Shown piece by piece: positions 17,932-64,000 of a DNA stretch of 64,000 nucleotides. The notes beneath the pieces are model-generated. The model saw only the letters and a list, made by a program, of their open reading frames with translations, was not told where the DNA came from and searched no databases. The number at the start of each line of letters is the position of its first letter. Positions within the stretch are counted from its first letter, which is position 1. The DNA is taken from positions 197,789-261,788 of IMG/VR virus record IMGVR_UViG_3300028829_003504; one strand, 5' to 3'. The translations under genes and the position numbers were made by a program.

Positions 17932-18414
17932 ATGAAACAATTTGATACCAACCCCGACCGTCTTAGACGGCAACAGGCTGTTATGTCTCACTTAAAATTC
18001 TATCGTGGTGAGCTAGATGGTATTTGGGGACCGGCTTCTATTAGTGCTAAGAAAGCATTTGAGGTCAGTGGGTCATTCACTGGTGGGCTTCCTAACCAAG
18101 GACTTCCATTTAATCCGAATGCCCAACTGCCCTCAATACTTTATCGTGACCCACAGACAGGACTTGTTTGTCATCCTGAACTAAGTGACGAGAAACTAAC
18201 AGAGATGTTCCGCAGCCGTGGCAATGTTAGTGTAACTAAAGTGTCGGAAACTCAAGTATCTAATGATACTAAGAAAGTTGAACAACCGCATGTGCCTACG
18301 CAGCAGGAACCTCAGCGACAAGAGAACCGTAAGCAGGAACCTCAGCGACAAGAGAACCGTAAGCAGGAACCTCAGCGACAAGAGAAGCTTAAGCAGAAAC
18401 ATCGCCAAGGATAG
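17932..18414 (+). CDS. peptidoglycan-binding-domain protein with C-terminal charged repeats
   Basis: LKFYRGELDGIWGPASISA matches the PGBD DGxxGPxT motif; QEPQRQENRK repeats. Confidence 0.6.
   Translation: MKQFDTNPDRLRRQQAVMSHLKFYRGELDGIWGPASISAKKAFEVSGSFTGGLPNQGLPFNPNAQLPSILYRDPQTGLVCHPELSDEKLTEMFRSRGNVSVTKVSETQVSNDTKKVEQPHVPTQQEPQRQENRKQEPQRQENRKQEPQRQEKLKQKHRQG
18302..18386 (+). repeat. 30-bp coding tandem repeat, about 2.8 copies
   Basis: AGCAGGAACCTCAGCGACAAGAGAACCGTA x2 plus a partial third copy. Confidence 0.95.
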
Positions 18415-34539: not shown

Positions 34540-37500
34540 ATGATGGCAGATGAACAGTTAAAGAGTTTCATTTCGAACTACTTGTATTTATCAGATCTAC
34601 GTAATGTAGACAAGACTAATCCACTAACTTTCGAACTTGAACCAGATCACAGAACATTTTTGATGGTAAGTTCTTATGACGAACCTACTTTTTCGCAATT
34701 ACCTTACAACGTATTATGGCTTGTGTGTGACCCAGAAGACCCTTGGTATAATACAGTATATCGTCGTACTAATCATACTAACGCTGATGGTAGAAAGAGT
34801 ACGTGGGAAGAAATCACTACCTTTGATATGCTTTACGTAGTAGACCAATACTATCAAGCAATTAGTGATGCTGACCCATTTGAATTAGGTATTGAAGGTG
34901 AGTTCTCTTTAGGGCCTGCCTCAACTCTGAAAGCAGGTCTTATATTGATACCTGAAGTCCAAGGCGGCGACCCTGTTGTTGTTACTTTTGACTACCCTGG
35001 ATTTTTAGGCGCCCGCACACCTAAAGAGCATACACATCCTGATAAGCCACGGACTATGGTACACATCGACGGAGAATACTCTATCGATGAAAACTATCCT
35101 GACTCTGTAGGCGATACAGACACCTTCGTTTCATTTGATTACTCTCAGCTTCCAGAAGAAGGTTCCGTGTTCTTCTTAACTGGGAATAACCCTGATCGTA
35201 CGAACGAATGGTTCGGTGAGTGGCGTCTTCCCACAGAAGATGATGTAACGTACTTCATTCCTACTCTCATAGCTGTTGATGCGAGGCTAGCCTCAGGTGC
35301 AGTTGAGCTGGGTGATAACGCTACAGGTCAAGTAGAGGCCGACGGCGTATTCGATGATAACACTAGGGATATCAATCCTTCTGACATTGTTTGGACAATT
35401 GAAAATAACGCAGAAGGTATTACTATTGATCAGAGCGGTGTAATTACTATTCCTGACATAAGTTCTGATACTACTATAACCGTTAACGCTAAACTTGAGG
35501 ATAAGTACCATCCTGGGACTTTCGTTAATGGACTCTTAGTTATCAATGTTAAAGACCTATTTACCCCAGTGGTTCCACAATCACTTGCAATCATAGGTAA
35601 CGAGACGCAACCTGAGCAAACTACAGGCAGCTACGTGTTCCGTGTGACGTACTCCGATGGAGCAACTTCGGATATAACACCAGATACCGCTAGTAGCTCA
35701 GCACCTATTGCCACATTTGGTATTAACGGTGACTTAACTGCAATGGACATTACTAATGACACCCCTACAGTTTTAAGTGCGTCATCAGCTATCGAAGGTA
35801 TTATACTTAGTGCCTCATTACCTGTTACCATACTGGCGGAAGTAATTCCAGTTAGTTTGACCATCACAGGTCTTGCTACTGTACAGGAAGAAGGCACTTA
35901 CACCTACGATTTCGTCGTTTCTTACTCTGATGGAACTACTCAGGATATATCTATGGTAGACGGCGCTACTTCTAGTGACGTTACATCAGGTATATTTAAT
36001 ACGGATGGTGAATTAACTACTTTAGACATAGTTAATGATACGTCTATTGTCCTAGAAGCCTCATTTGCAGTTGACGGTATTCTACTTGATGCTTCACTAA
36101 CTGTTAATATTGTTGCCGACTCAATTCCTTCGAGCATAGAGATTATAGGAGCCAGTAGCATTGACGAAGGTGAAACCGAATCTTATACATTCCAAGTTAC
36201 TTATTCGGATAGCACAACTCGAATGTTAGATTTAGAGGACCTGGACTCATTCATTTCGGACAGTGTTGATTTGGTAGTCGCAGGTTCAGTTGCCTCAGTA
36301 GGTGATATTAATGCAAATGGTTCAGCCATACTGACTGTTAGTTATACGGAGTTAGGCCATACTATTACAGATACTCACAACGTTACTTTGGTAGCAGACC
36401 CCGTCCCTCAGTCATTAGTTATACTAGGAGCCAGTAGTATTAGAGAAGGTGAAACCGAATCTTATACGTACCAAGTTACTATGACAGATGGAAGTACCAA
36501 AATGGTTACTGTATCTGATTTAGCCTCTGATAATGCGGACTTGACAGTAGTAGGCGATGATGCCACAGTAGGTTCAATACTAGCTGATGGTGCCGCTGAA
36601 CTATCCGCATCTTACACGGAAGATGGCATTACGGTTAACGCTACGCACCCTGTAGGTTTAATTGCTGCCTCAGCCCCTCAGTCATTAGCCATACTAGGAG
36701 CCAGTAGTATTGACGAAGGTGAGACCGAATCTTATACATTCCAAGTTACCTATTCAGATGGAACTACGTCATTGGTTACAGTCTCGGACTTCGCCTCTGA
36801 TAATGTAGACTTAGTTATTACGGATTCTGACGCCACTGTAGGTTCAATACTGGTTAACGGTTCAGCTGGCCTAACTGCTTCTTATACGGAAGACGGTGTT
36901 ACAGTCAGTGCATCCTTACCTGTGGATTTAGTAGCTGCGCCTGCACCTCAATCTCTGGAGATTCTAGGTTCTTCGACATCGATTGAGTCTGGTGTAGAGC
37001 TATATACGTTTAAGTTAACTTATTCAGATGGAACTACGTCTTTAGTTGATGTAACGGACTTCGCCTCTGATAATGTGGACGTTTCTATATCAGGTAATAA
37101 TACGGCGACTGTGGGTTCTATTACTTCTGACGGATCGGCTATTCTATCTGCTTCTTACACGGAAGACGGTGTCACTGTTAGCGACACTCATGAATTGACC
37201 TACGTGGCTAATGCGGCTCCTACGTCCCTTAAGATCATAGGTGCAGACACTATACAGGAAGGTGACCAAGAAACGTTTACGTTTGAAGTTACATACTCTG
37301 ATGGTTCTACTTCATTAGTCTCAGTGGCTGACTTTTCTTCTGATGGAGCTGCAGGCGTAGTCTCAGATAACAGTGTGGTTACTGGTGGTGATATTGACGC
37401 AGATACTTCGGTGGTACTCTCTGCTTCTTATGAGGAGGATGGGGTCTCTGTTACGGACACACACAACCTTAATATTGAAGCATTACCTGTACCTACAAGT

Positions 37501-38994
37501 ATGGAGATATTGGGCACAGACTCTATAAATGAGAATGACTCCAGTACGTATACTTTCCAAGTTACAATGAGTGACTCAACTACTAAAATGGTTACGGTTA
37601 CTGATTTTGCTTCGGACGATGTATCTAAAGCTACGGTATTAAATAACACTACTGTTAATACAATGGACATTTCATCTGACACCACAGTATCCGTATCCGC
37701 TTCGTATGAAGAAGAAGGAACCACTGTTAGTGCTAGTAAGACAATTAACATTGTTGCTGATGTAGTACCTACCTCGATTGAAATTACAGGTCCTATTAGT
37801 GTGGATGAGGAGTCTATAACTTCTTATACGTTCCAAGTTACAATGAGTGACTCAACTACCAAAACGGTTACGGCCAGTACGGCAAGTGCCGACACAGGTG
37901 CCTTCTCAACGGCAGGTAGTTTTACTGCACCTACTGTTACCGGTCCTAGTAGTGTTGTCCTTTCCGCTTCTTACACGGAAGGCGATGTTACTGTAGATGA
38001 CACACATGTAGTTAGTATAGGAAACACACTGAACCCATTAATCAGTATTTCGTTATCAGGTCTAGCTCAGTTGGATGAAGGAGGTAACACTACACCTCTG
38101 ACTGTAACGGCAACATTTGAAGACTCCACTACGTCTGTCGTAACAGGTTCTTCTGACTACGTGATTTTATCTGGAGGTACTTACGGATCTATATCAGATA
38201 ACATTGTTACCTCAGGTAACGTGACAGAAAACTCGAACATGGTGTTAGAAGCAACTTATACTATAGGTGGGGTTACTAAGACGGCCGAACACACTATATC
38301 AATTAGAGCTGTAGCGCCTATTCCTGTTAGCGTTGAGATATCAGGGCCTTCTGAGGTAGATGAAGGTCAGACTGGTAGTTTAATTGCTGTGGTAACTTAC
38401 GATGATAACTCTACTGCGGCAGTAACTACTTCGGGTACCTGGTCATTTGCAGGTCCATCCGAAGGAGCTAGCGTGGATTCCAGCGGTATATTTTCTGCTC
38501 CTGCTGACGTAGGAAATGATACATCGGTTACTGTTAGTTTTACGTACACTGAGAACGGCACCACACTAGATGATAGTCACTCTATACTAGTTAAAGATAT
38601 TCCAGTTAGTGGACTTTCTGCTGCTTGGGGTTATGACGAGTCAGGTGCTGATATTTGGCCATACACGCAAGCGTTTATAGAAGCTCTACCTAATAAGTTA
38701 GCTTCGCCTGTTATAGGTCAGACGTTGACGTTTGGTACTAGTGGACACACCTACTTGGCTATACCTGAATCGGAATTATCCCCAGGTAAAGCCTTGTGGT
38801 ACTATTGGAACGGAGGAACAAATCCTAGTATTTTGGGTGGAGCTACGTGGCCTCTTGTTGGGTTCTTGGGCTCCAATAAACCTGCTATCATTAGCATTGC
38901 TGGCGAGAACTGGCATATCTATCGTTCTGACTTCGCGGGCGTACTTGGACCTGATACTTACGCCTTTTTTGAAGACAATATGCCATCATTCTAA
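34540..38994 (+). CDS. large Ig-like-repeat virion protein (fibre/appendage)
   Basis: About 12 repeats of ~90 aa (PxSLxIxGxxxIxEGxTxSYTFQVTYSDG); acidic, Ser/Thr-rich. Confidence 0.8.
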   Translation: MMADEQLKSFISNYLYLSDLRNVDKTNPLTFELEPDHRTFLMVSSYDEPTFSQLPYNVLWLVCDPEDPWYNTVYRRTNHTNADGRKSTWEEITTFDMLYVVDQYYQAISDADPFELGIEGEFSLGPASTLKAGLILIPEVQGGDPVVVTFDYPGFLGARTPKEHTHPDKPRTMVHIDGEYSIDENYPDSVGDTDTFVSFDYSQLPEEGSVFFLTGNNPDRTNEWFGEWRLPTEDDVTYFIPTLIAVDARLASGAVELGDNATGQVEADGVFDDNTRDINPSDIVWTIENNAEGITIDQSGVITIPDISSDTTITVNAKLEDKYHPGTFVNGLLVINVKDLFTPVVPQSLAIIGNETQPEQTTGSYVFRVTYSDGATSDITPDTASSSAPIATFGINGDLTAMDITNDTPTVLSASSAIEGIILSASLPVTILAEVIPVSLTITGLATVQEEGTYTYDFVVSYSDGTTQDISMVDGATSSDVTSGIFNTDGELTTLDIVNDTSIVLEASFAVDGILLDASLTVNIVADSIPSSIEIIGASSIDEGETESYTFQVTYSDSTTRMLDLEDLDSFISDSVDLVVAGSVASVGDINANGSAILTVSYTELGHTITDTHNVTLVADPVPQSLVILGASSIREGETESYTYQVTMTDGSTKMVTVSDLASDNADLTVVGDDATVGSILADGAAELSASYTEDGITVNATHPVGLIAASAPQSLAILGASSIDEGETESYTFQVTYSDGTTSLVTVSDFASDNVDLVITDSDATVGSILVNGSAGLTASYTEDGVTVSASLPVDLVAAPAPQSLEILGSSTSIESGVELYTFKLTYSDGTTSLVDVTDFASDNVDVSISGNNTATVGSITSDGSAILSASYTEDGVTVSDTHELTYVANAAPTSLKIIGADTIQEGDQETFTFEVTYSDGSTSLVSVADFSSDGAAGVVSDNSVVTGGDIDADTSVVLSASYEEDGVSVTDTHNLNIEALPVPTSMEILGTDSINENDSSTYTFQVTMSDSTTKMVTVTDFASDDVSKATVLNNTTVNTMDISSDTTVSVSASYEEEGTTVSASKTINIVADVVPTSIEITGPISVDEESITSYTFQVTMSDSTTKTVTASTASADTGAFSTAGSFTAPTVTGPSSVVLSASYTEGDVTVDDTHVVSIGNTLNPLISISLSGLAQLDEGGNTTPLTVTATFEDSTTSVVTGSSDYVILSGGTYGSISDNIVTSGNVTENSNMVLEATYTIGGVTKTAEHTISIRAVAPIPVSVEISGPSEVDEGQTGSLIAVVTYDDNSTAAVTTSGTWSFAGPSEGASVDSSGIFSAPADVGNDTSVTVSFTYTENGTTLDDSHSILVKDIPVSGLSAAWGYDESGADIWPYTQAFIEALPNKLASPVIGQTLTFGTSGHTYLAIPESELSPGKALWYYWNGGTNPSILGGATWPLVGFLGSNKPAIISIAGENWHIYRSDFAGVLGPDTYAFFEDNMPSF
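35575..38600 (+). repeat. degenerate ~270-290-bp tandem units encoding Ig-like domains
   Basis: Shared DNA blocks, e.g. ATACTAGGAGCCAGTAGTATT at 36421 and 36691, GTTACAATGAGTGACTCAACTAC twice. Confidence 0.8.
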
Positions 38995-46177: not shown

Positions 46178-47995
46178 ATGTTAAGCGAATCCGCTAAGTT
46201 TGAAAACTTAGACCAATTCAAATGGTACACCTATACAGGTCGTAATAAGAATCTGGTAGCAAGAAAGCATGAGAGACTATTAGTGAAAGGTGCCGTATAC
46301 GGCATGAAAGCCATTAGGGGTGATAAATTCTATATAGTCTTTCCTGAAGACTACCACATTGACTTTACGGTTACTAAGCGTGTAGGCCTTAATATATCTA
46401 AAAACTCTAAACTTAAGCGTAAGCCACCTCCACTGACTAATAACAAGGGAGAGGGAGGTCGTGCTTCTCGCACACTAGGGCCTAAAGGCCTTGGTAGAGT
46501 CCAAAAGGCCCAAGAGAAGTCTAAGTGGGATGCTACTTACTTCAAGCCGCAAGCTCGGGTAGGGGATGAATTGAAGAACGGTATAAGTTTCGAGAATTAC
46601 CAATGGCGTAATTTTACGGACATAACTCCCATTAGGAAGCGTAATGGTACCAAGGTTGTTCACTCATTCCCAAAGAAGTCTATTGTAGGTGTCCGCTTCT
46701 TACGTGATAGTAAAGGAGCTAAACTAGTTACTACTGATGGTAAAGTACTTACTATAAGTAAAGAGCAGTTTGATATGGTACTTAACGCATCGAAAGTAAT
46801 GCCTAAGAATAAATGGCCTGAAGGGACCATCTCTGTTGAAGAAATGGCTGAGAACCTTCAGTACGAAAAAGAATCGGACAAGGCCCGACGCATTTCTGAT
46901 AGAAACCTAGCCAGAGCCGATAACGAAGCAGCTAGGCGTGAAAAGAAGAATCAGGAGCGTAAGAAGAGACGGGAGGATCAAGAAGCCATTAGGTCCGAAC
47001 GCGAGAGATTGAAGCGAAGACTTGAGGGCCGTAAGAAAGAAGTCAATCTTACTATGAAACCTAAGACCAGTAAAGAGCTTGCGGATATATTAGTGCAGGG
47101 TAAAAAGCCTAAAGAGGACGAGGGCGTATTATCTGATATGGATCTGCAAGAGAATCTAGACGCCCTTAAGCAGATGGACTTGGATTCAGATGATACTCAG
47201 GACTACGATGACGAAGAGTCTGGAGGGGAAGGTGGTACTTCTAATGACTTCGATGATAGTGACCTGTCGGACGCAGATATGCCTGACCCTGAAAACCGTG
47301 ACTTCGATGATAACGAATCCGATAAACTTATGGACGACCTTGACGAATTAATCGAGCAGCGACACGAGCAGGCATTTAGTTTAGGTGACCTTGACGGCGA
47401 AGACGAAGAGGAAGACCTTGACGAAGAGGAAGACCTTGACGAAGAGGAAGACCCGGACGAAGAGGAAGACCCGGACGACCTTGACGAAGAGGAAGACCCG
47501 GACGACCTTGACGAAGAGGAAGACCCGGACGACCTTGACGAAGAGGAAGACCTTGACGAAGAGGAAGACCCGGACGACCTTGACGAAGAGGAAGACCCGG
47601 ACGAAGAGGAAGACCCGGACGTCGCTATTGCTGAGGAGGAGCTAGGAGAAGAAGGAGAAGAGGAAGACCTGGACGAAGAAGGTGACTCTAATCCTAAAGA
47701 CTATGTATCAGAAGAAGGTGACGTGGTTTTATTCCTAAGTGATGATAGCGATAAACGTGAGTACGTACTACTTGACATATTCCCACTACCTGCAAACAAT
47801 AACATCACTGTGTATAAGGTGTACGATGTAACCAACAAGCCTGACGTGTTCAATACTGTCCGTGTAGCAAAAGGCTCTCGTAATAAGTTTGAGAATATGG
47901 TTAAGTTCCTGCGCAAAATGAATCCAAAAGAATATAGTGGCTACTATACCTCAGCCGAACTTATGGATAGGTCTAAGAGTCCTATTAACAGCTAA
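46178..47995 (+). CDS. putative internal virion protein with basic N-half and acidic repeat region
   Basis: Starts MLSESA; DEEEDL/DEEEDP repeats. Confidence 0.65.
   Translation: MLSESAKFENLDQFKWYTYTGRNKNLVARKHERLLVKGAVYGMKAIRGDKFYIVFPEDYHIDFTVTKRVGLNISKNSKLKRKPPPLTNNKGEGGRASRTLGPKGLGRVQKAQEKSKWDATYFKPQARVGDELKNGISFENYQWRNFTDITPIRKRNGTKVVHSFPKKSIVGVRFLRDSKGAKLVTTDGKVLTISKEQFDMVLNASKVMPKNKWPEGTISVEEMAENLQYEKESDKARRISDRNLARADNEAARREKKNQERKKRREDQEAIRSERERLKRRLEGRKKEVNLTMKPKTSKELADILVQGKKPKEDEGVLSDMDLQENLDALKQMDLDSDDTQDYDDEESGGEGGTSNDFDDSDLSDADMPDPENRDFDDNESDKLMDDLDELIEQRHEQAFSLGDLDGEDEEEDLDEEEDLDEEEDPDEEEDPDDLDEEEDPDDLDEEEDPDDLDEEEDLDEEEDPDDLDEEEDPDEEEDPDVAIAEEELGEEGEEEDLDEEGDSNPKDYVSEEGDVVLFLSDDSDKREYVLLDIFPLPANNNITVYKVYDVTNKPDVFNTVRVAKGSRNKFENMVKFLRKMNPKEYSGYYTSAELMDRSKSPINS
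47402..47620 (+). repeat. coding tandem array of 18-bp units with 9-bp GACGACCTT inserts
   Basis: GACGAAGAGGAAGACC(TT/CG) about 12 times, encoding DEEEDL/P. Confidence 0.95.
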
Positions 47996-58380: not shown

Positions 58381-59039
58381 AACGACTAAATATTAATATT
58401 ACAACTACCGATGTTTTTCATCCAGTAGATAAGCTAGGTACCTTTGATAGATCACAACTACGTACCTTATTCCTACAACTTAATGCCGTTGCTTCCACTG
58501 CGGCAGATTGCGCTGAGCAATGCCAATCAATACCTAATGACTTAGTCGAACTGGGTTTAGATGATTTAGACGTATCGCCCCCGCACTTACGCAACTACTA
58601 CGAGCGAGTGGAGGCCGAAGCAGTTTCATTAAGTGACGCCGTGGCTAATCGCTTACAGGCTTCGGCCTCCACTGCTCACATGCAAGACGGTTTTGTGCGA
58701 CATCAGTTCTATAAAGCATTTGAAATAAGTAATAAGTTTGGATCTAATCAGTATAGTGGTATTAGATCTAGAGTACTTGACGCTATAGATAACCTACCTG
58801 TTACAGGTTTAGGGCACGACGACAGTACAGTAGAGGTAGCCTCATATAGTCCTTGTACACCAAGACCTGAACCTGCCCACGCTAAGTACTCGGCCTTGGT
58901 ATCTACTGCCGTTGTACTAGAAGCGTTCAATACGGCCTTACGTAAGTTTAAGGCCGTAGCGGTTGCTTCGCTGGACATGCCTTGCGATCAAGGTATTCAC
59001 GATGAAGCTAAAGCACTGTTGTACGGAGCTGAATTATAA
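58377..59039 (+). CDS. hypothetical (putative virion) protein
   Basis: TTG 58377 after AAGGAG, overlapping upstream TGA. Confidence 0.6.
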   Translation: MKRLNINITTTDVFHPVDKLGTFDRSQLRTLFLQLNAVASTAADCAEQCQSIPNDLVELGLDDLDVSPPHLRNYYERVEAEAVSLSDAVANRLQASASTAHMQDGFVRHQFYKAFEISNKFGSNQYSGIRSRVLDAIDNLPVTGLGHDDSTVEVASYSPCTPRPEPAHAKYSALVSTAVVLEAFNTALRKFKAVAVASLDMPCDQGIHDEAKALLYGAEL

Positions 59040-59827
59040 TGAAGTCAATTACTGTAGGCCGTCCTCAGCATAGATTCTCAAGTGAGGCCTTTGATGTAGG
59101 TTCATTGGCCCCTGCTACCGAAATGCTTGATGCTAGTAGAACATCGAAATCGATACAATTAAAGCCTGAAATTACTGGTGGCCAATCTGTTGACCTAGAC
59201 GTTAACGCTTGGCTTCCAATGGCCTCGGAAGTATATAACATAAGTCCTGATATTAGAGACTATGTTCTTGCTCCCATCCCAGCCATGATTACAGGTATGC
59301 CGAATACGAATGGTGACAGTGCGACGACAAGAGAAATGTTACGCTTTCAACCAGACCATGGTATGCCGAGCTACAAAACGTTTAAGGGTAAACCTACTCA
59401 CGTTGAGCATAACAATAAAGATTATACGATTGCTAAAGGTATTATCTTTGACAGTTACTTGCAACGTCTGCCTCAGTTTAAAGGCGACCACGCCAGATTA
59501 ACATTGCTATTAGGATTTGATCGCAGACGCGACCCAGATTTAGCAAATGCCATCGCAGCTAATAAAATAAACACATATAGCATAGGTATGTTCTTTAATT
59601 CCTATCGCTGCTCTATATGTAGTCATGTAGTGCAGCAAGGTACGATGCACATGTGTAGTCATACCCGACCACGCAGACCGACTTACTTGCATGATAGCGG
59701 TGTTCTTTCTTACCGAGAATGTCAGAATATAGTTGGCTTTGAATGTAGTTCTGTAGGAGACCCTGCCTATGTATCAGCCCATCATAACCCCGACCAGGTC
59801 ATAAACGTCCAAGACTTTAGGAATTAA
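59039..59827 (+). CDS. putative prohead (maturation) serine protease, HK97 gp4/assemblin-like
   Basis: NTNGD, FKGKPTHVEHN (His), YSIG (Ser), FECSSVGDPA; CSIC...CSH Zn insert. Confidence 0.7.
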   Translation: MKSITVGRPQHRFSSEAFDVGSLAPATEMLDASRTSKSIQLKPEITGGQSVDLDVNAWLPMASEVYNISPDIRDYVLAPIPAMITGMPNTNGDSATTREMLRFQPDHGMPSYKTFKGKPTHVEHNNKDYTIAKGIIFDSYLQRLPQFKGDHARLTLLLGFDRRRDPDLANAIAANKINTYSIGMFFNSYRCSICSHVVQQGTMHMCSHTRPRRPTYLHDSGVLSYRECQNIVGFECSSVGDPAYVSAHHNPDQVINVQDFRN

Positions 59828-59829
59828 TC

Positions 59830-60138
59830 ATGGCAGAAATATTTGCAAAGAAACAGGAAAGCGAGAGTGCCAATGTAGGCGGTAAACGTGTAGAGAAAGC
59901 AATCACAAAACTGTTCAACGACAACGGAGGTAACGGGGAAGACTTAATGTTTGACCTAGCCGACTATTTCATAGTTGACGCACCCTTCAATGAACTTAAA
60001 CGCTTGAAGACCACTCTGTTAGGCCGAGTAGCTTTAGGTCTTATCTTGAAAGAAGAATTCTACAACGATGAACTTCTTGAAGACCAGCCTCGAGCACGGC
60101 GTACAGCCCTAGCTGAACTGGGTTTCCCAAGAGGTTAA
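59830..60138 (+). CDS. small putative head protein (QESESAN)
   Basis: 102 aa; N-terminal SESA. Confidence 0.65.
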   Translation: MAEIFAKKQESESANVGGKRVEKAITKLFNDNGGNGEDLMFDLADYFIVDAPFNELKRLKTTLLGRVALGLILKEEFYNDELLEDQPRARRTALAELGFPRG

Positions 60139-60139
60139 T

Positions 60140-60381
60140 ATACAAATATTCATAAGTGAGTCAGCCTCTGTGGAATCTCTGATAAAGCAGAAGGCCAATA
60201 AAGCAATAAAGCAGTTGTTGAAGAAGAACCAATTTGAGGTTCTAAATGACAATGACGTTAGCATTGACGTAACTGATTATCCTCAAATGACTTCTACGTA
60301 GGCGTTGATGGACTAAGCTTCACGGTGAAAGTTAAAGTACGTAAGCCTATGGAGATGCCCAAACGAACTGTAAACTTATAG
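60140..60381 (+). pseudogene. disrupted small gene of the IFISESA family (ATA in start position, -1 shift near 60287)
   Basis: IQIFISESASVESLIKQK...PQMTST* (60140-60301); -1 frame continues NDFYVGVDGLSFTVKVKVRK...VNL* to 60381. Confidence 0.5.
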
Positions 60382-60546
60382 TATAGCCAAATCTTAAACG
60401 TTCGTATTGTATATCATACGAACATTGAAGGAGGTGGGCCCACGTCTCCCAGACTACTACCTCTGGGTAATAAAAATGTAGTAGAGCGATGTCTCGGCCC
60501 TCCTAATAAGAGGGCTTCCTTAATTAAATTGGAGTGGTATGTGAAC
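60371..60546 (+). repeat. structured intergenic element, long copy
   Basis: Collinear with 60944-61027 apart from two insertions (12 nt and about 80 nt) and a few substitutions. Confidence 0.85.
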
Positions 60547-60581
60547 CCACCCATCATAATCCAAAACTTTAGGAATTAACT

Positions 60582-60959
60582 ATGAAAGTTATATTAGTAA
60601 GCCAGTCATCCGTTAAAATGGAAAACAACGCTATCGTCATATTCGGCAGACGCGGTAAGAAGATTGCAGAAGAACTGAAGGCAGTAGCTGACTTAAGTAA
60701 GAAAGTTAAAGGCTCAGTTCCTATGATGGATACTGACATAATGAAAGTAGTAGGACTTCTGCAGGTAAGCAAACAGAAAATTGCAGAGATACCTGCGGAT
60801 AACTTAAAAACATTACGTGACTACGGCCCTAAATTGCTTTCCTACTGCAAGATGTATAAGAAATTAAATGCAGCCTCTTATGAACGTGACGATTGGTTAA
60901 AAAGTGCAGGTAAGAGTAAATCGCAAATAGGCAATATAAGCACTAAACTTAGAGTATAG
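60582..60959 (+). CDS. small protein (MKVILVSQSS)
   Basis: 125 aa, AGGA RBS. Confidence 0.75.
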   Translation: MKVILVSQSSVKMENNAIVIFGRRGKKIAEELKAVADLSKKVKGSVPMMDTDIMKVVGLLQVSKQKIAEIPADNLKTLRDYGPKLLSYCKMYKKLNAASYERDDWLKSAGKSKSQIGNISTKLRV

Positions 60960-61027
60960 CCAAATCTTAAACGTTCGTACGGACATTGAAGGATGGCTTC
61001 CTTAATTAAATTGGAGTGGTATGTGAA
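60944..61027 (+). repeat. structured intergenic element, short copy
   Basis: TAAACTTAGAGTATAGCCAAATCTTAAACGTTCGTACGGACATTGAAGGATGGCTTCCTTAATTAAATTGGAGTGGTATGTGAA. Confidence 0.85.
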
Positions 61028-61034
61028 ACCTATT

Positions 61035-61478
61035 ATGATAGCACTTAGCGCAGGGTTGCACTTTGATGATTTTGTACGCGGGTCATTCAAAGCAGAAACA
61101 ATAGAAAAAGAAGGCAGTGCATTAGTCTTCACCACCACTCTAGTCGGCAAGGCAACTAAAGCCCCTGACTATAAGAAGAACCAGCTTATACGGAACTTCT
61201 TAATTAAACTAGGTGAGTGGACTCAAGCCCATCTAGATGAATTACATTCACAGGGTATTAAAGAAATACGAGTATCACCTATAGTAGAAGACCTTATGGG
61301 TAGACTACGAAGAACATCAGGTAGCTCTAGATTCTACTTGAACAGCAAAGAGACTTCGTTTCATATTGTTGTTGGTAAAAACTACTTATTACTATCTGTT
61401 CCTGAGAAGAAAGTCAGCACGATTGACAACAAGGCACAGCTAGCCAATCTACGTAACATATTAAAGGGTAACACCTAA
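61035..61478 (+). CDS. small protein (MIALSAG)
   Basis: ATG 61035 preferred because the 60993 start lies inside the repeat element. Confidence 0.6.
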   Translation: MIALSAGLHFDDFVRGSFKAETIEKEGSALVFTTTLVGKATKAPDYKKNQLIRNFLIKLGEWTQAHLDELHSQGIKEIRVSPIVEDLMGRLRRTSGSSRFYLNSKETSFHIVVGKNYLLLSVPEKKVSTIDNKAQLANLRNILKGNT

Positions 61479-62859: not shown

Positions 62860-62942
62860 CAACTAGTTAGGGACAGGGCCGGCCAGCCTTTCAAAGAACC
62901 CTTTATTCTGAGATTACCTACTAGTTGTTTTCTATAAAGGGT
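62860..62942 (+). promoter_or_regulatory. RBS-sequestering leader structure
   Basis: ACCCTTTAT 62898-62906 / ATAAAGGGT 62934-62942 covers the AAGGG RBS; CAACTAGT 62860-62867 / ACTAGTTG 62920-62927 is a crossing helix. Confidence 0.5.
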
Positions 62943-62948
62943 AGAACT

Positions 62949-63785
62949 ATGTCAAAATCAAATAGACTACAAGAATTCAATTCTTGGCTGGTCTCTAAAC
63001 CGAACATCACTATCGTAGGTGATATCCCCAATAAAGCTTGGACTAAGGTGACTCTGACCTGTTCAGACCATGCGTTTACTTGGAGTACAAGTCCCGGTAA
63101 CATAAGACCTGATCGTATAGGCTGTAAGCACTGCGCCTCGAATAAATTCATAAAGCCTTTCTGGACTAAATACAATTCACTAGAACACCTACGCATAATT
63201 AAAGGGGTGCCTTTAAAGGGCTCTGATTCAATTACGTTCCACTGCACTAAGCACGAACATGTTTGGGACATGACAGTACAATCATTTGCTAGGTGGAAAC
63301 ACGGATGTAAGCTCTGTGCCCAAGAAGCTAGTATATCGTCATCTAACGGTTATACTAATTGGAAATCAGTTAGACTGGGCGACACCTGTGTTAAAGTTCA
63401 CGGGTACGAAGACCACGCCATTCGCTATGTGCTAAGTAAGAACATTAAAGCCAATGACCTTCTAGTTCACGGTTCTCATAAAGTACCTACTATTCGCTAC
63501 AACGGCAATAGAAACTATTTCCCGGACTTGTTTATACCTAGTATGAATCGCATAGTTGAAGTTAAATCTTTGTATACTCTAGGCTTCAACCTTAGGGCGA
63601 CTACTGAGGATTCTATATTTAGAGGTAAAAGACGATTCGACAATCTTTTACAGAAACGTCTAGCAGTTCGCCAATCTGGCTTTAAGTTTAAGCTATTGGT
63701 TTTTAACAACGCAGGAGCGTTAATAGGGCTACCTAAGAAATGGTGGACTTATTCATACTCTGACCTTAAACAAACATTTACATAG
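62949..63785 (+). CDS. putative homing endonuclease: two Zn-finger repeats plus PD-(D/E)xK nuclease
   Basis: CxxH...W...GCxxC x2; YFPDLFIPSMNRIVEVKS. Confidence 0.65.
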   Translation: MSKSNRLQEFNSWLVSKPNITIVGDIPNKAWTKVTLTCSDHAFTWSTSPGNIRPDRIGCKHCASNKFIKPFWTKYNSLEHLRIIKGVPLKGSDSITFHCTKHEHVWDMTVQSFARWKHGCKLCAQEASISSSNGYTNWKSVRLGDTCVKVHGYEDHAIRYVLSKNIKANDLLVHGSHKVPTIRYNGNRNYFPDLFIPSMNRIVEVKSLYTLGFNLRATTEDSIFRGKRRFDNLLQKRLAVRQSGFKFKLLVFNNAGALIGLPKKWWTYSYSDLKQTFT

Positions 63786-63793
63786 GATCTAAT

Positions 63794-64000
63794 ATGAAAG
63801 TCTTTGTGTCTAATAGTGGGGAGGTTAGAGTATTACCTTTCCCTAAAATACAAAACTATAATCAAGCGTTACGTTTAGCTAAGACACTAGCACCTCGCTT
63901 ACCTGAAGTTAGAGTGGATATATCACCTGACGTATTAGTTAAGGCCGCCTTTGATATAGCACAGATTGTTCAGGCACTATCTAGATTCGTTGACGATAGT
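63794..64000 (+). CDS. protein starting MKVFVSNSG, truncated by window end
   Basis: AGGA RBS, ATG 63794, frame open to the end. Confidence 0.7.
   Translation, partial: MKVFVSNSGEVRVLPFPKIQNYNQALRLAKTLAPRLPEVRVDISPDVLVKAAFDIAQIVQALSRFVDDS

What the first reader, a model, noticed from the sequence alone, without database searches (positions are those of the whole stretch)
60371..61027. Duplicated structured intergenic element whose two copies differ by insertions at hairpin tips
Seen: copy 2 (60944-61027) is an 84-nt core. Copy 1 (60371-60546) is the same core with 12 nt added inside hairpin GTTCGTA...TACGAAC (copy 2: GTTCG-TA-CGGAC) and about 80 nt replacing the loop of the ATTGAAGGA/TCCTTAAT stem. 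Length variation confined to stem tips is typical of homologous structured RNAs. Both copies overlap the stop of the upstream gene, end in GGAG-TGGT-ATG-TGA (RBS plus start-stop), and bracket one cargo gene (60582). I could not match it to a family I know. It could be an ncRNA or processing signal, a translational re-initiation device, or a recombination site that shuffles single-gene cassettes in this variable array.
Basis: partly seen in the sequence, partly recalled or inferred. Interest (0 to 1): 0.7.

Follow-up and report, generated by a model that had tools for sequence, protein, structure and literature searches.

The report
Phage leader RNA and its recombination scar
The long copy is a previously undescribed, conserved, pseudoknotted leader RNA found once per genome in a small clade of marine jumbo phages, and the short copy is a gutted remnant left when recombination with a related phage inserted one extra gene.

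Summary
The repeat is real. Its flanks are 36 nt (97% identical) and 39 nt (95%), and the 262-kb phage genome holds only these two copies.

The "80-nt insert" of copy 1 is the conserved core of a ~145-nt RNA motif. I found this motif in six other related marine jumbo-phage contigs. It lies downstream of the prohead-protease gene in the five contigs that include it, and directly upstream of one gene family (gene3, 61023-61478) or a remodelled gene3-type start.

Three hairpins covary. The core is nearly invariant and contains a 10-nt perfect Shine-Dalgarno sequence paired to an anti-SD-like strand, plus a predicted H-type pseudoknot. There is no Rfam match, even at E<=10.

Copy 2 lacks the core, the P1 hairpin tip and the promoter-like motif. 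My covariance model does not detect it.

After copy 1 comes the gene3 start fused to a remnant of a protease 3' end, then gene2. A relative (L114) carries exactly the predicted donor order: protease, gene2 homolog, full RNA. The duplication is therefore a recombination scar.

The function of the RNA is inferred, not shown. My best guess is a cis-acting translational leader. The ATG-TGA "start-stop" is not conserved; GTG is the real gene3 start.

The parts
59039..59827 (+). Prohead (head maturation) protease gene. Its last ~20 nt plus the next start codon (59808-59832) form a second two-copy repeat with 60560-60584.
   Evidence: phrog_18299, E 3e-95; repeat D11
59830..60138 (+). gene1 (102 aa), one of three alternative small genes that fill the slot after the protease in relatives. 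Its homolog occupies the slot in L005.
   Evidence: BLASTP 30% identity, E 4e-12 to L005 4948-5277
60143..60380 (+). Decayed gene (geneX). The start codon is lost, there is a frameshift near 60290-60301, and the 3' part is truncated. It is the homolog of the intact 173-aa gene that fills the slot in L004.
   Evidence: 71% nt identity to L004 8798-9005; frames read; the same sequence occurs in independent assemblies
60367..60374 (+). Promoter-like motif ACTGTAAA, with TA at +15/+16, directly 5' of the RNA motif. Copy 2 lacks it (ACTAAAC there).
   Evidence: 41 copies in the genome against about 14 expected. 26 lie within 80 nt upstream of an ORF. Consensus AAACTGTAAAta..N..tA. L004 has AGTGTAAA-N7-TA at the same place.
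60387..60529 (+). Conserved leader RNA motif (copy 1), the covariance-model hit. Its parts are: 5' box CCNAAUCUUA; P1 60400-60407/60416-60423; SD-like GAAGGAGGUGG 60427-60437; P0 60429-60431/60518-60520; P2 60432-60437/60443-60447; P3 60448-60453/60462-60467; pseudoknot 60455-60460 with 60478-60483; P4 60484-60486/60493-60495; P5 60496-60502/60510-60516.
   Evidence: R1 133 bits, E 5e-31; single hit in the genome; pair counts; RNAalifold
60531..60579 (+). RBS GGAG (60531-60534) and the gene3-type GTG start (60541) open a 12-codon chimeric mini-ORF. It begins as the gene3 start, continues as a remnant of a protease 3' end (about 60547-60579, with an internal ~20-nt deletion), and stops 2 nt before the gene2 ATG.
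   Evidence: The translation MNPPIIIQNFRN* compares with the protease C-terminus ...HNPDQVINVQDFRN*. Alignment of protease tails.
60582..60959 (+). gene2 (125 aa), the inserted cargo. Its homolog lies directly after the protease in L114.
   Evidence: tblastn 49% and 40% identity in two frames, E 1e-15, to L114 1558-1829; no Pfam or PHROG match
60944..61030 (+). Copy 2, a vestigial element. It keeps the 5' box, a 4-bp stump of P1, the P0 stem capped by a short loop, the RBS and the GTG. It lacks the promoter-like motif, the P1 tip and the whole core (P2, P3, pseudoknot, P4, P5).
   Evidence: Not found by R1 at E<=1. Fold z +0.62.
61023..61478 (+). gene3 (151 aa, GTG start), the gene family that the RNA motif normally precedes. 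Its function is unknown.
   Evidence: Homologs in L004, L005, L113, L115, L158, L160, L007. AF2 pLDDT 83 with only weak GNAT-like similarity, Z<=6.8.

Best explanation
Copy 1 is the single functional copy of a roughly 145-nt sense-strand RNA motif that belongs to a clade of marine jumbo phages. It lies downstream of the prohead-protease gene and a slot of alternative small genes, and it is fused to the ribosome-binding site and first codons of gene3. In the window a phage promoter-like motif directly precedes it, so it is most likely the 5' leader of the gene3 transcript. Its anatomy is as follows. P1 is a hairpin conserved in structure but free in sequence. The core is compact and nearly invariant, closed by a short stem (P0). 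Inside the core, a 10-nt perfect Shine-Dalgarno sequence (UAAGGAGGUG) pairs through invariant G-U wobbles with an anti-SD-like strand (C-R-UCUCC). Next comes an H-type pseudoknot (stem CCCWG/CWGGG, loop ACUAC pairing with GUAGU across an A-rich linker), and then a GC hairpin (P5) that ends about 27-33 nt before the start codon. My inference is that the motif controls 30S ribosome access to the downstream start site, or the stability of the mRNA 5' end, in cis. The duplication has a separate cause. A related phage with the order protease, gene2, RNA, gene3 recombined with this lineage through a short imperfect homology between the gene3 start (CCTATTATGAT) and the protease 3' end (CCCATCATAA). 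That placed [protease tail + gene2 + a second element] between the RNA and gene3. The second element (copy 2) then lost, or already lacked, the promoter-like motif, the P1 tip and the 80-nt core, and kept only what gene3 needs for translation. gene2 is now read behind the leader through a 12-codon chimeric mini-ORF that stops 2 nt before its ATG. SHOWN: the repeat, the homologs, the covariation of P1, P3 and P5, the single copy per genome, the protease-tail remnant, and the donor-type arrangement in L114. INFERRED: the transcript start, the pseudoknot, any role in translation, and the order of the deletions.
For: The 80-nt stretch of copy 1 matches L004 9384-9483, which lies in front of the gene3 homolog. 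Full homologs occur in L004, L005, L109, L114, L115 and L160, scoring 124-148 bits with model R1. Covariation: 95% of cells are paired against 83% in shuffles. 14 pairs carry changes on both sides, against 2-5 when partners are slid (P1 8, P3 2, P5 4). G-U pairs fit only the + strand. Core identity is 63-80%, equal to or above that of the protease gene (57-79%), while the P1 sequence is 17-46% identical. No frame stays open across all homologs. There is one hit in the 262-kb genome. The downstream gene is gene3 in L004, L005, L115 and L160. L109 and L114 keep a gene3-type start before other sequence. Promoter-like motif. Scar: the protease-tail remnant; L114 shows protease, gene2 homolog, full RNA; L113, from the same sample, has gene3 behind a bare RBS. 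The slot gene is gene1-like in L005 and geneX in L004. The arrangement is identical in other assemblies, and gene2 depth equals flank depth.
Against: There are only 7 distinct sequences. P2, the pseudoknot, P4 and P0 never vary, so they have no covariation support, and the alignment was fitted to the model. No RNA data could be listed, so the transcript, its 5' end and any processing are unknown. The promoter-like motif is clear only in the window and L004. Each downstream gene has its own SD, so the role of the upstream SD-like sequence is undefined. The motif is absent from some relatives that have gene3 (L007, L113, L158), so it is dispensable. gene3 gave no informative fold, so nothing points to an RNA-binding partner. 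I cannot tell whether copy 2 decayed after the insertion or arrived already reduced.
Confidence: 0.6

Rival explanations
1. One reading: the 84-nt form is the functional core of a structured RNA, and the 12-nt and 80-nt pieces are optional expansions at hairpin tips.
For: The differences do lie at the tips of P1 and of the closing stem. The P1 loop varies in length among homologs.
Against: All 7 homologs carry the 80-nt part, and it holds almost all the invariant positions. No relative has the short form. R1 does not detect copy 2. Copy 2 folds no better than shuffles.
Confidence: 0.05
2. The element's function is recombination. It would be a dedicated cassette-exchange site, like PeSLs of T4-type phages or an att-like site, that moves single genes, possibly through mini-circles formed between copies.
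For: The element and the protease tail bound every gene replacement seen among relatives. Direct repeats bracket one gene here. PeSLs have the same layout of stop codon, promoter, stem-loop, SD and start, and they mediate such shuffling (PMC2839356, PMC4122927).
Against: There is one full copy per genome rather than dozens. The invariant pseudoknotted core and the sense-strand G-U pairs point to an RNA function. The actual junction lies in coding sequence at a short imperfect homology, not inside the element. None of the 9 neighbouring ORFs is a recombinase. No joints appear in the contigs. Recombination at conserved blocks is an expected by-product.
Confidence: 0.12
3. It is an independent small non-coding RNA, transcribed from the ACTGTAAA motif and ended at P5, which acts in trans on host or phage targets.
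For: A promoter-like motif lies just upstream. P5 is a GC hairpin followed by a pyrimidine/U-rich tail. The core is highly conserved in sequence. The SD-like 10-mer could bind 16S rRNA or mimic an mRNA.
Against: The tail is not a canonical U-tract, and the terminator scan does not flag it. The motif always abuts a translation start and travels with it through recombination. The promoter-like motif is not evident in 4-5 of the relatives.
Confidence: 0.13
4. It is a riboswitch or transcription attenuator. The core would bind a ligand or factor, and P5 plus its tail would decide whether transcription continues into gene3.
For: The order is promoter, conserved pseudoknotted core, hairpin, U/C-rich tail, RBS. 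Single-stranded and junction nucleotides are invariant.
Against: No Rfam family matches even at E<=10. I found no alternative anti-terminator pairing. The U-tract is weak. gene3 has no recognisable metabolic role.
Confidence: 0.08

Closest known systems
PeSL regulatory cassettes of T4-type phages (Arbiol et al. 2010, PMC2839356; Comeau et al. 2014, PMC4122927)
   Same: Both are intergenic blocks that run from the stop codon of one gene through a promoter and stem-loop(s) to the SD and start of the next gene. Both are conserved while the flanking small genes are swapped among related phages. Both can leave direct repeats bracketing a single ORF.
   Different: PeSLs are many per genome and consist of a sigma-70-type promoter plus a simple terminator hairpin. 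Here there is one full copy per genome, no sigma-70 consensus, and a multi-helix pseudoknotted core with invariant nucleotides. The crossover that made this repeat lies in coding sequence.
T4 gene 32 mRNA translational operator, with E. coli rpsO as a cellular analogue (review PMC3014915)
   Same: Both have an H-type pseudoknot some 60-90 nt upstream of the start codon in a phage leader, followed by an A+U-rich stretch that reaches the RBS. In the window this stretch reads UUAAUUAAAUU.
   Different: In T4 the encoded protein gp32, an ssDNA-binding protein, is the repressor. Here gene3 has no SSB-like or RNA-binding fold match. The motif is larger (5-6 helices) and carries an SD/anti-SD-like helix. 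No binding has been tested.
Split SD / structured translation initiation regions of T4 genes 25 and 38 (PMC3014915)
   Same: In both, an SD sequence lies far upstream of the start codon and folded RNA lies between them.
   Different: In T4 the fold brings the SD to 5-11 nt from the AUG. Here, even with the core looped out, the SD-like sequence stays at least ~20 nt away and is itself paired. The gene also has its own SD at normal spacing.
Variable internal-protein (ip) locus of T-even phages, with a shared N-terminal capsid-targeting sequence (from my own knowledge, not checked in a paper here)
   Same: Both have a slot next to head genes that holds alternative small genes sharing a short conserved N-terminus. 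Here that N-terminus is M-x-I/V-F-I/V-S-E/Q-S, which ends in an I-S-E motif like a gp21-type cleavage site.
   Different: Neither packaging nor cleavage of these proteins has been tested. This concerns the cargo genes, not the RNA.

Membership tests
Any Rfam 15 family | Covariance-model score at or above the gathering threshold | tested here: not met
   No hit in the window at gathering thresholds, and none in 60300-61100 even at E<=10.
PeSL (T4-type phages) | Sigma-70-like -35/-10 promoter inside the cassette | tested here: not met
   No sigma-70-type site at 60340-60546. A different, phage-specific promoter-like motif (ACTGTAAA) is present instead.
PeSL (T4-type phages) | Many copies per genome, concentrated in hyperplastic regions | tested here: not met
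   One full copy plus one vestige in 262 kb.
PeSL (T4-type phages) | Gene insertions and replacements between related genomes are bounded by the motif | tested here: met
   The slot gene differs among L004, L005, L114 and the window. The downstream gene is remodelled in L109, L114 and the window.
PeSL (T4-type phages) | Mini-circles or deletion products from exchange between neighbouring copies | tested here: inconclusive
   Only assembler contigs of two DNA runs were available. They show no joints, and gene2 depth equals flank depth. Rare forms would be missed.
Gene 32-type autogenous translational operator | H-type pseudoknot in the leader upstream of the RBS | tested here: inconclusive
   Stem P3 covaries (2 pairs). 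The second stem ACUAC/GUAGU is present in all 7 but never varies, so it has no covariation support.
Gene 32-type autogenous translational operator | The regulated gene encodes the RNA-binding repressor | not testable with these tools
   The gene3 model (pLDDT 83) shows only weak GNAT-like similarity, Z<=6.8 and Foldseek E>0.02.
Split-SD translation initiation region (T4 genes 25/38) | Folding brings a distant SD to 5-11 nt from the start codon | tested here: not met
   With P0 closed, the SD-like sequence is at least ~20 nt from the GTG and is paired in P0/P2. A local GGAG lies 6 nt before the GTG.
Riboswitch | Ligand-dependent switch between alternative structures | not testable with these tools
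   This needs in-line probing or SHAPE. No known aptamer family matches.
Mobile element (MITE-like) for the 80-nt piece | Several copies, terminal inverted repeats, target-site duplication | tested here: not met
   The piece is single-copy in the genome. It sits at the orthologous place in relatives. No further copies were found in IMG/VR or GenBank phages.

The most novel reading that the evidence does not exclude
The core is a new class of sensor leader. A perfect 10-nt Shine-Dalgarno sequence is held in a deliberately weakened helix (invariant G-U wobbles) with an anti-SD mimic, next to a pseudoknot. It would respond directly to free 30S subunits, or to a ligand, and so set translation of a head-module gene in jumbo phages: a ribosome-sensing or riboswitch-like device with no described relative.
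Probability: 0.15. Interest if true: 0.75.

Novelty: new member of a known kind. Interest (0 to 1): 0.5.

Why it matters
The finding adds a candidate RNA family, with a covariance model and 7 members, to the very few structured cis-acting RNAs known from jumbo phages. Its invariant SD/anti-SD-like helix plus pseudoknot is a concrete and testable design. The window also offers a natural control, because the same flanks occur with and without the core in a single genome. Separately, the locus records step by step how phage gene arrays grow. Three genes that are alternatives in relatives are stacked here, joined at conserved regulatory and coding boundaries, and one of them has already decayed.

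Tried and rejected
- **Rfam:** no hit at gathering thresholds or at E<=10.
- **ARAGORN:** no tRNA or tmRNA in the window.
- **Exact and degenerate pattern scans of IMG/VR:** searches gave nothing. Searches gave 101 and 42 loci, all chance hits by nhmmer. L155 was examined and is GC-rich coding sequence.
- **GenBank phages:** no DNA match to the locus or the element, and no protein match to gene3. The protease finds Erwinia Y3-, Yoloswag- and NCTB-like jumbo phages at about 50% identity, but their protease loci lack the motif.
- **The search for related loci with the protease alone:** nothing.
- **RNA-seq:** no run was listed.
- **Sigma-70 promoter and intrinsic terminator scan:** nothing at the element.
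- **Coding hypothesis for the element:** rejected. Indels are not multiples of three, and no frame is open in all homologs.
- **Self-cleaving ribozyme classes (HDV-like, hammerhead, twister, pistol, hatchet):** I checked the HDV-like fold and the hammerhead consensus by eye, and the Rfam scan gave no hit at E<=10.
- **Programmed frameshift or bypass linking the upstream gene to gene3:** rejected, because the upstream genes differ among homologs.
- **Pairing of the 5' box with the 3' tail, and a TAAGAT/ATCTTA hairpin upstream:** not conserved.
- **gene3 fold searches (PDB, BFVD, VIA-wide, ESM Atlas):** nothing above background.

Full report
**Setting.** The window is the last 64 kb of a 261,788-bp virus record with a 144-bp terminal direct repeat, i.e. 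a circularly closed assembly. The source is a marine metagenome. The prohead protease (59039-59827; phrog_18299, E 3e-95) is about 50% identical to those of Erwinia phages Y3 and Yoloswag and of phage NCTB. This is therefore an uncultured jumbo phage of that broad group. The finding lies in the head-gene module, just downstream of the protease.

**Observation.** The repeat is as described. Flanks of 36 nt (97% identical) and 39 nt (95%) are shared by 60371-60548 and 60944-61030, and these are the only two places in the genome. Copy 1 has 12 extra nt in the first hairpin, and 80 nt where copy 2 has a single T. Two other JGI assemblies are 100% identical over 5.5-6.9 kb, and an ENA assembly has the same gene layout. 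Contigs of two DNA runs break at the shared 33-mer, which has about double depth. The depth of gene2 equals that of its flanks, and no alternative joints appear.

**The long form is the conserved one.**
- I fetched contigs that encode close protease homologs. I also ran one degenerate pattern scan of metagenome contigs.
- The "80-nt insert" of copy 1 aligns to L004 9384-9483, in the gap before the gene3 homolog.
- Full-length homologs of copy 1 occur in L004, L005 (identical to L006), L109, L114, L115 and L160. In the five of these contigs that include a protease gene, that gene is 57-88% identical in protein to the window's.
- A covariance model built from the seven sequences scores them at 124-148 bits. 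It finds exactly one hit in the whole genome. Copy 2 is not detected.
- None of the six homolog-bearing contigs carries the short form.
- The motif is absent from IMG/VR apart from the window's own record and from GenBank phages. It is also absent from the loci of several relatives that do have gene3: L007, L113 and L158.

**Structure.**
- RNAalifold and my pair counts agree on three covarying hairpins. P1 shows changes on both sides at all 8 pairs, and its sequence is only 17-46% identical between homologs. P3 is CCCWG/CWGGG, with 2 covarying pairs. P5 alternates among GCCCUC/GAGGGC, GCCCUG/CAGGGC, GCCCCG/CGGGGC and GCUUCC/GGAAGC, with 4 covarying pairs.
- Overall, 95% of cells are paired against 83% in shuffles. 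Fourteen pairs have double changes, against 2-5 when partners are slid.
- The rest of the core never varies, so covariation neither supports nor contradicts it. This covers UAAGGAGGUG paired to C-R-UCUCC through two invariant wobble positions (P2, with P0 closing the domain). It also covers the loop ACUAC of P3 paired to GUAGU across an A-rich linker, which is classic H-type pseudoknot geometry, and the block GAGC-N3-GUCUC.
- G-U pairs place the structure on the sense strand.
- Indels are not multiples of three, and no frame is open in all homologs.
- Core identity (63-80%) equals or exceeds that of the essential protease gene (57-79%). That argues for purifying selection on a non-coding RNA.
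- Single-sequence folds give z-scores of -1.5 to -4.1. Copy 2 gives +0.62.
- No Rfam family matches, even at E<=10.

**Context of the motif.**
- In L004, L005, L115 and L160 the next gene is the gene3 family.
- In L109 a 13-codon remnant of a gene3-type start precedes the real gene3 start. In L114 an unrelated gene carries a gene3-type N-terminus.
- The motif, the RBS and the first codons therefore travel together. This is why I favour a role at the translation initiation region.
The GTG and the following K-P/Q-I/V codons are conserved.
- An 8-mer, ACTGTAAA, occurs 41 times in the genome against about 14 expected. Twenty-six copies lie within 80 nt upstream of an ORF, and the motif follows gene orientation. 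It has a second conserved TA at +15/+16.
- One copy (60367-60374, with the TA) sits immediately 5' of the motif. L004 has AGTGTAAA-N7-TA at the same place. The other relatives are unclear on this point.
- Copy 2 reads ACTAAAC there and so lacks the motif.

**Origin of the duplication.**
- After the GTG of copy 1, the sequence reads as a 12-codon ORF, MNPPIIIQNFRN*. Its DNA aligns to the 3' end of protease genes (...HHNP...FRN*) with an internal ~20-nt deletion. It stops 2 nt before the gene2 ATG.
- The junction lies where the gene3 start (CCTATTATGAT) resembles the protease end (CCCATCATAA).
- L114 shows the predicted donor order: protease, gene2 homolog (there frameshifted), full RNA motif. 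L113, from the same sample, shows gene3 behind a bare RBS.
- In relatives the slot after the protease holds a gene1 homolog in L005, geneX in L004 or gene2 in L114. The window stacks all three, and geneX is already decayed: its start is lost, it is frameshifted, and it is truncated.
- The repeat is therefore the scar of an unequal exchange between two related genomes. Of the second element, only the parts that gene3 needs for translation survive.
- The deletions end at the bases of helices. That would fit hairpin-promoted slippage in DNA (from my own knowledge), but the cause was not tested.

**Mechanism.** The function of the RNA is inferred. The points in favour of a cis-acting leader are:
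- its fixed position 27-33 nt before a start codon;
- its co-transfer with that start through recombination;
- the promoter-like motif just upstream;
- a perfect anti-SD complement held in a wobble-weakened helix;
- a pseudoknot at the distance seen in the T4 gene 32 operator (PMC3014915).

I put about 0.4 on control of translation initiation or of 5'-end stability. The alternatives get less: an independent sRNA 0.13, an attenuator or riboswitch 0.08, and a dedicated recombination site 0.12. gene3 itself gave a confident model (pLDDT 83) but no informative fold match. No RNA run could be listed.

**Comparison with known systems.**
- As a recombination boundary, the closest analogue is the PeSL cassette of T4-type phages (PMC2839356, PMC4122927). 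The layout and the consequences are the same. However, PeSLs are multi-copy units of a sigma-70 promoter plus a terminator hairpin, and both of those features were tested here and not met.
- As an RNA, the closest analogues are the gene 32 pseudoknot operator and the structured start regions of T4 genes 25 and 38 (PMC3014915). Membership in those groups is not met or not testable.

**Verdict.** It is wrong in polarity, because the "insert" is the core and the "core" is a vestige. The RNA is a new family of a known kind, and the duplication is an ordinary recombination scar, though an unusually legible one.

Noticed in passing
Whole genome; in the window e.g. 2179, 10361, 18503, 30328, 48014, 60367, 62845: The promoter-like motif AAACTGTAAAta-N-TA occurs 41 times against about 14 expected. 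26 copies lie within 80 nt upstream of an ORF, and the motif follows gene orientation. It is probably this phage's own (middle or late) promoter consensus.
   Followed up: partly
window 60582, 61478, 63794, 50024, 59830; genome positions 10628, 11337, 25926, 27136, 176533: At least 8-10 genes begin with M-x-I/V-F-I/V-S-E/Q/N-S (e.g. MRIFISES, MEIFISES, MKIFISQS). The three alternative genes of the slot after the protease share this start. It may be a capsid-targeting propeptide cut by the prohead protease after I-S-E, like the T4 internal proteins.
   Followed up: partly
window 60143-60380: A pseudogene: the homolog of an intact 173-aa gene in L004, with a lost start codon, a frameshift near 60290-60301 and a truncated 3' part. 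It is identical in independent assemblies, so this is not a sequencing error.
   Followed up: yes
L114 1552-1934: The gene2 homolog of this relative is itself split by a frameshift (53 + 79 aa). Slot genes seem to decay often.
   Followed up: partly
L109 2374-2415: A 13-codon remnant of a gene3-type start (MLSLYISTSEIGI*) sits between the RNA motif and the real gene3 start. This is a second, independent scar of recombination at the same boundary.
   Followed up: partly
window 62925-63785: An ORF with HNH/endonuclease PHROG hits, DUF7487 and a weak treble-clef zinc-finger hit. It looks like a homing-endonuclease-type gene, 2 kb downstream of the array. A DUF7487 gene also lies in the same module of L160.
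   Followed up: no
window 36073-38008; 47360-47692; 18302-18403: Three sets of tandem repeats: protein-domain repeats of 270-279 nt (six to seven units), a run of 9-nt-period repeats, and three 30-nt repeats. All lie inside long ORFs of the structural region.
   Followed up: no
window 63857-64000 and the genome start: The record ends in an exact 144-bp direct terminal repeat of its first bases, which marks a circularly closed assembly rather than defined physical ends.
   Followed up: partly
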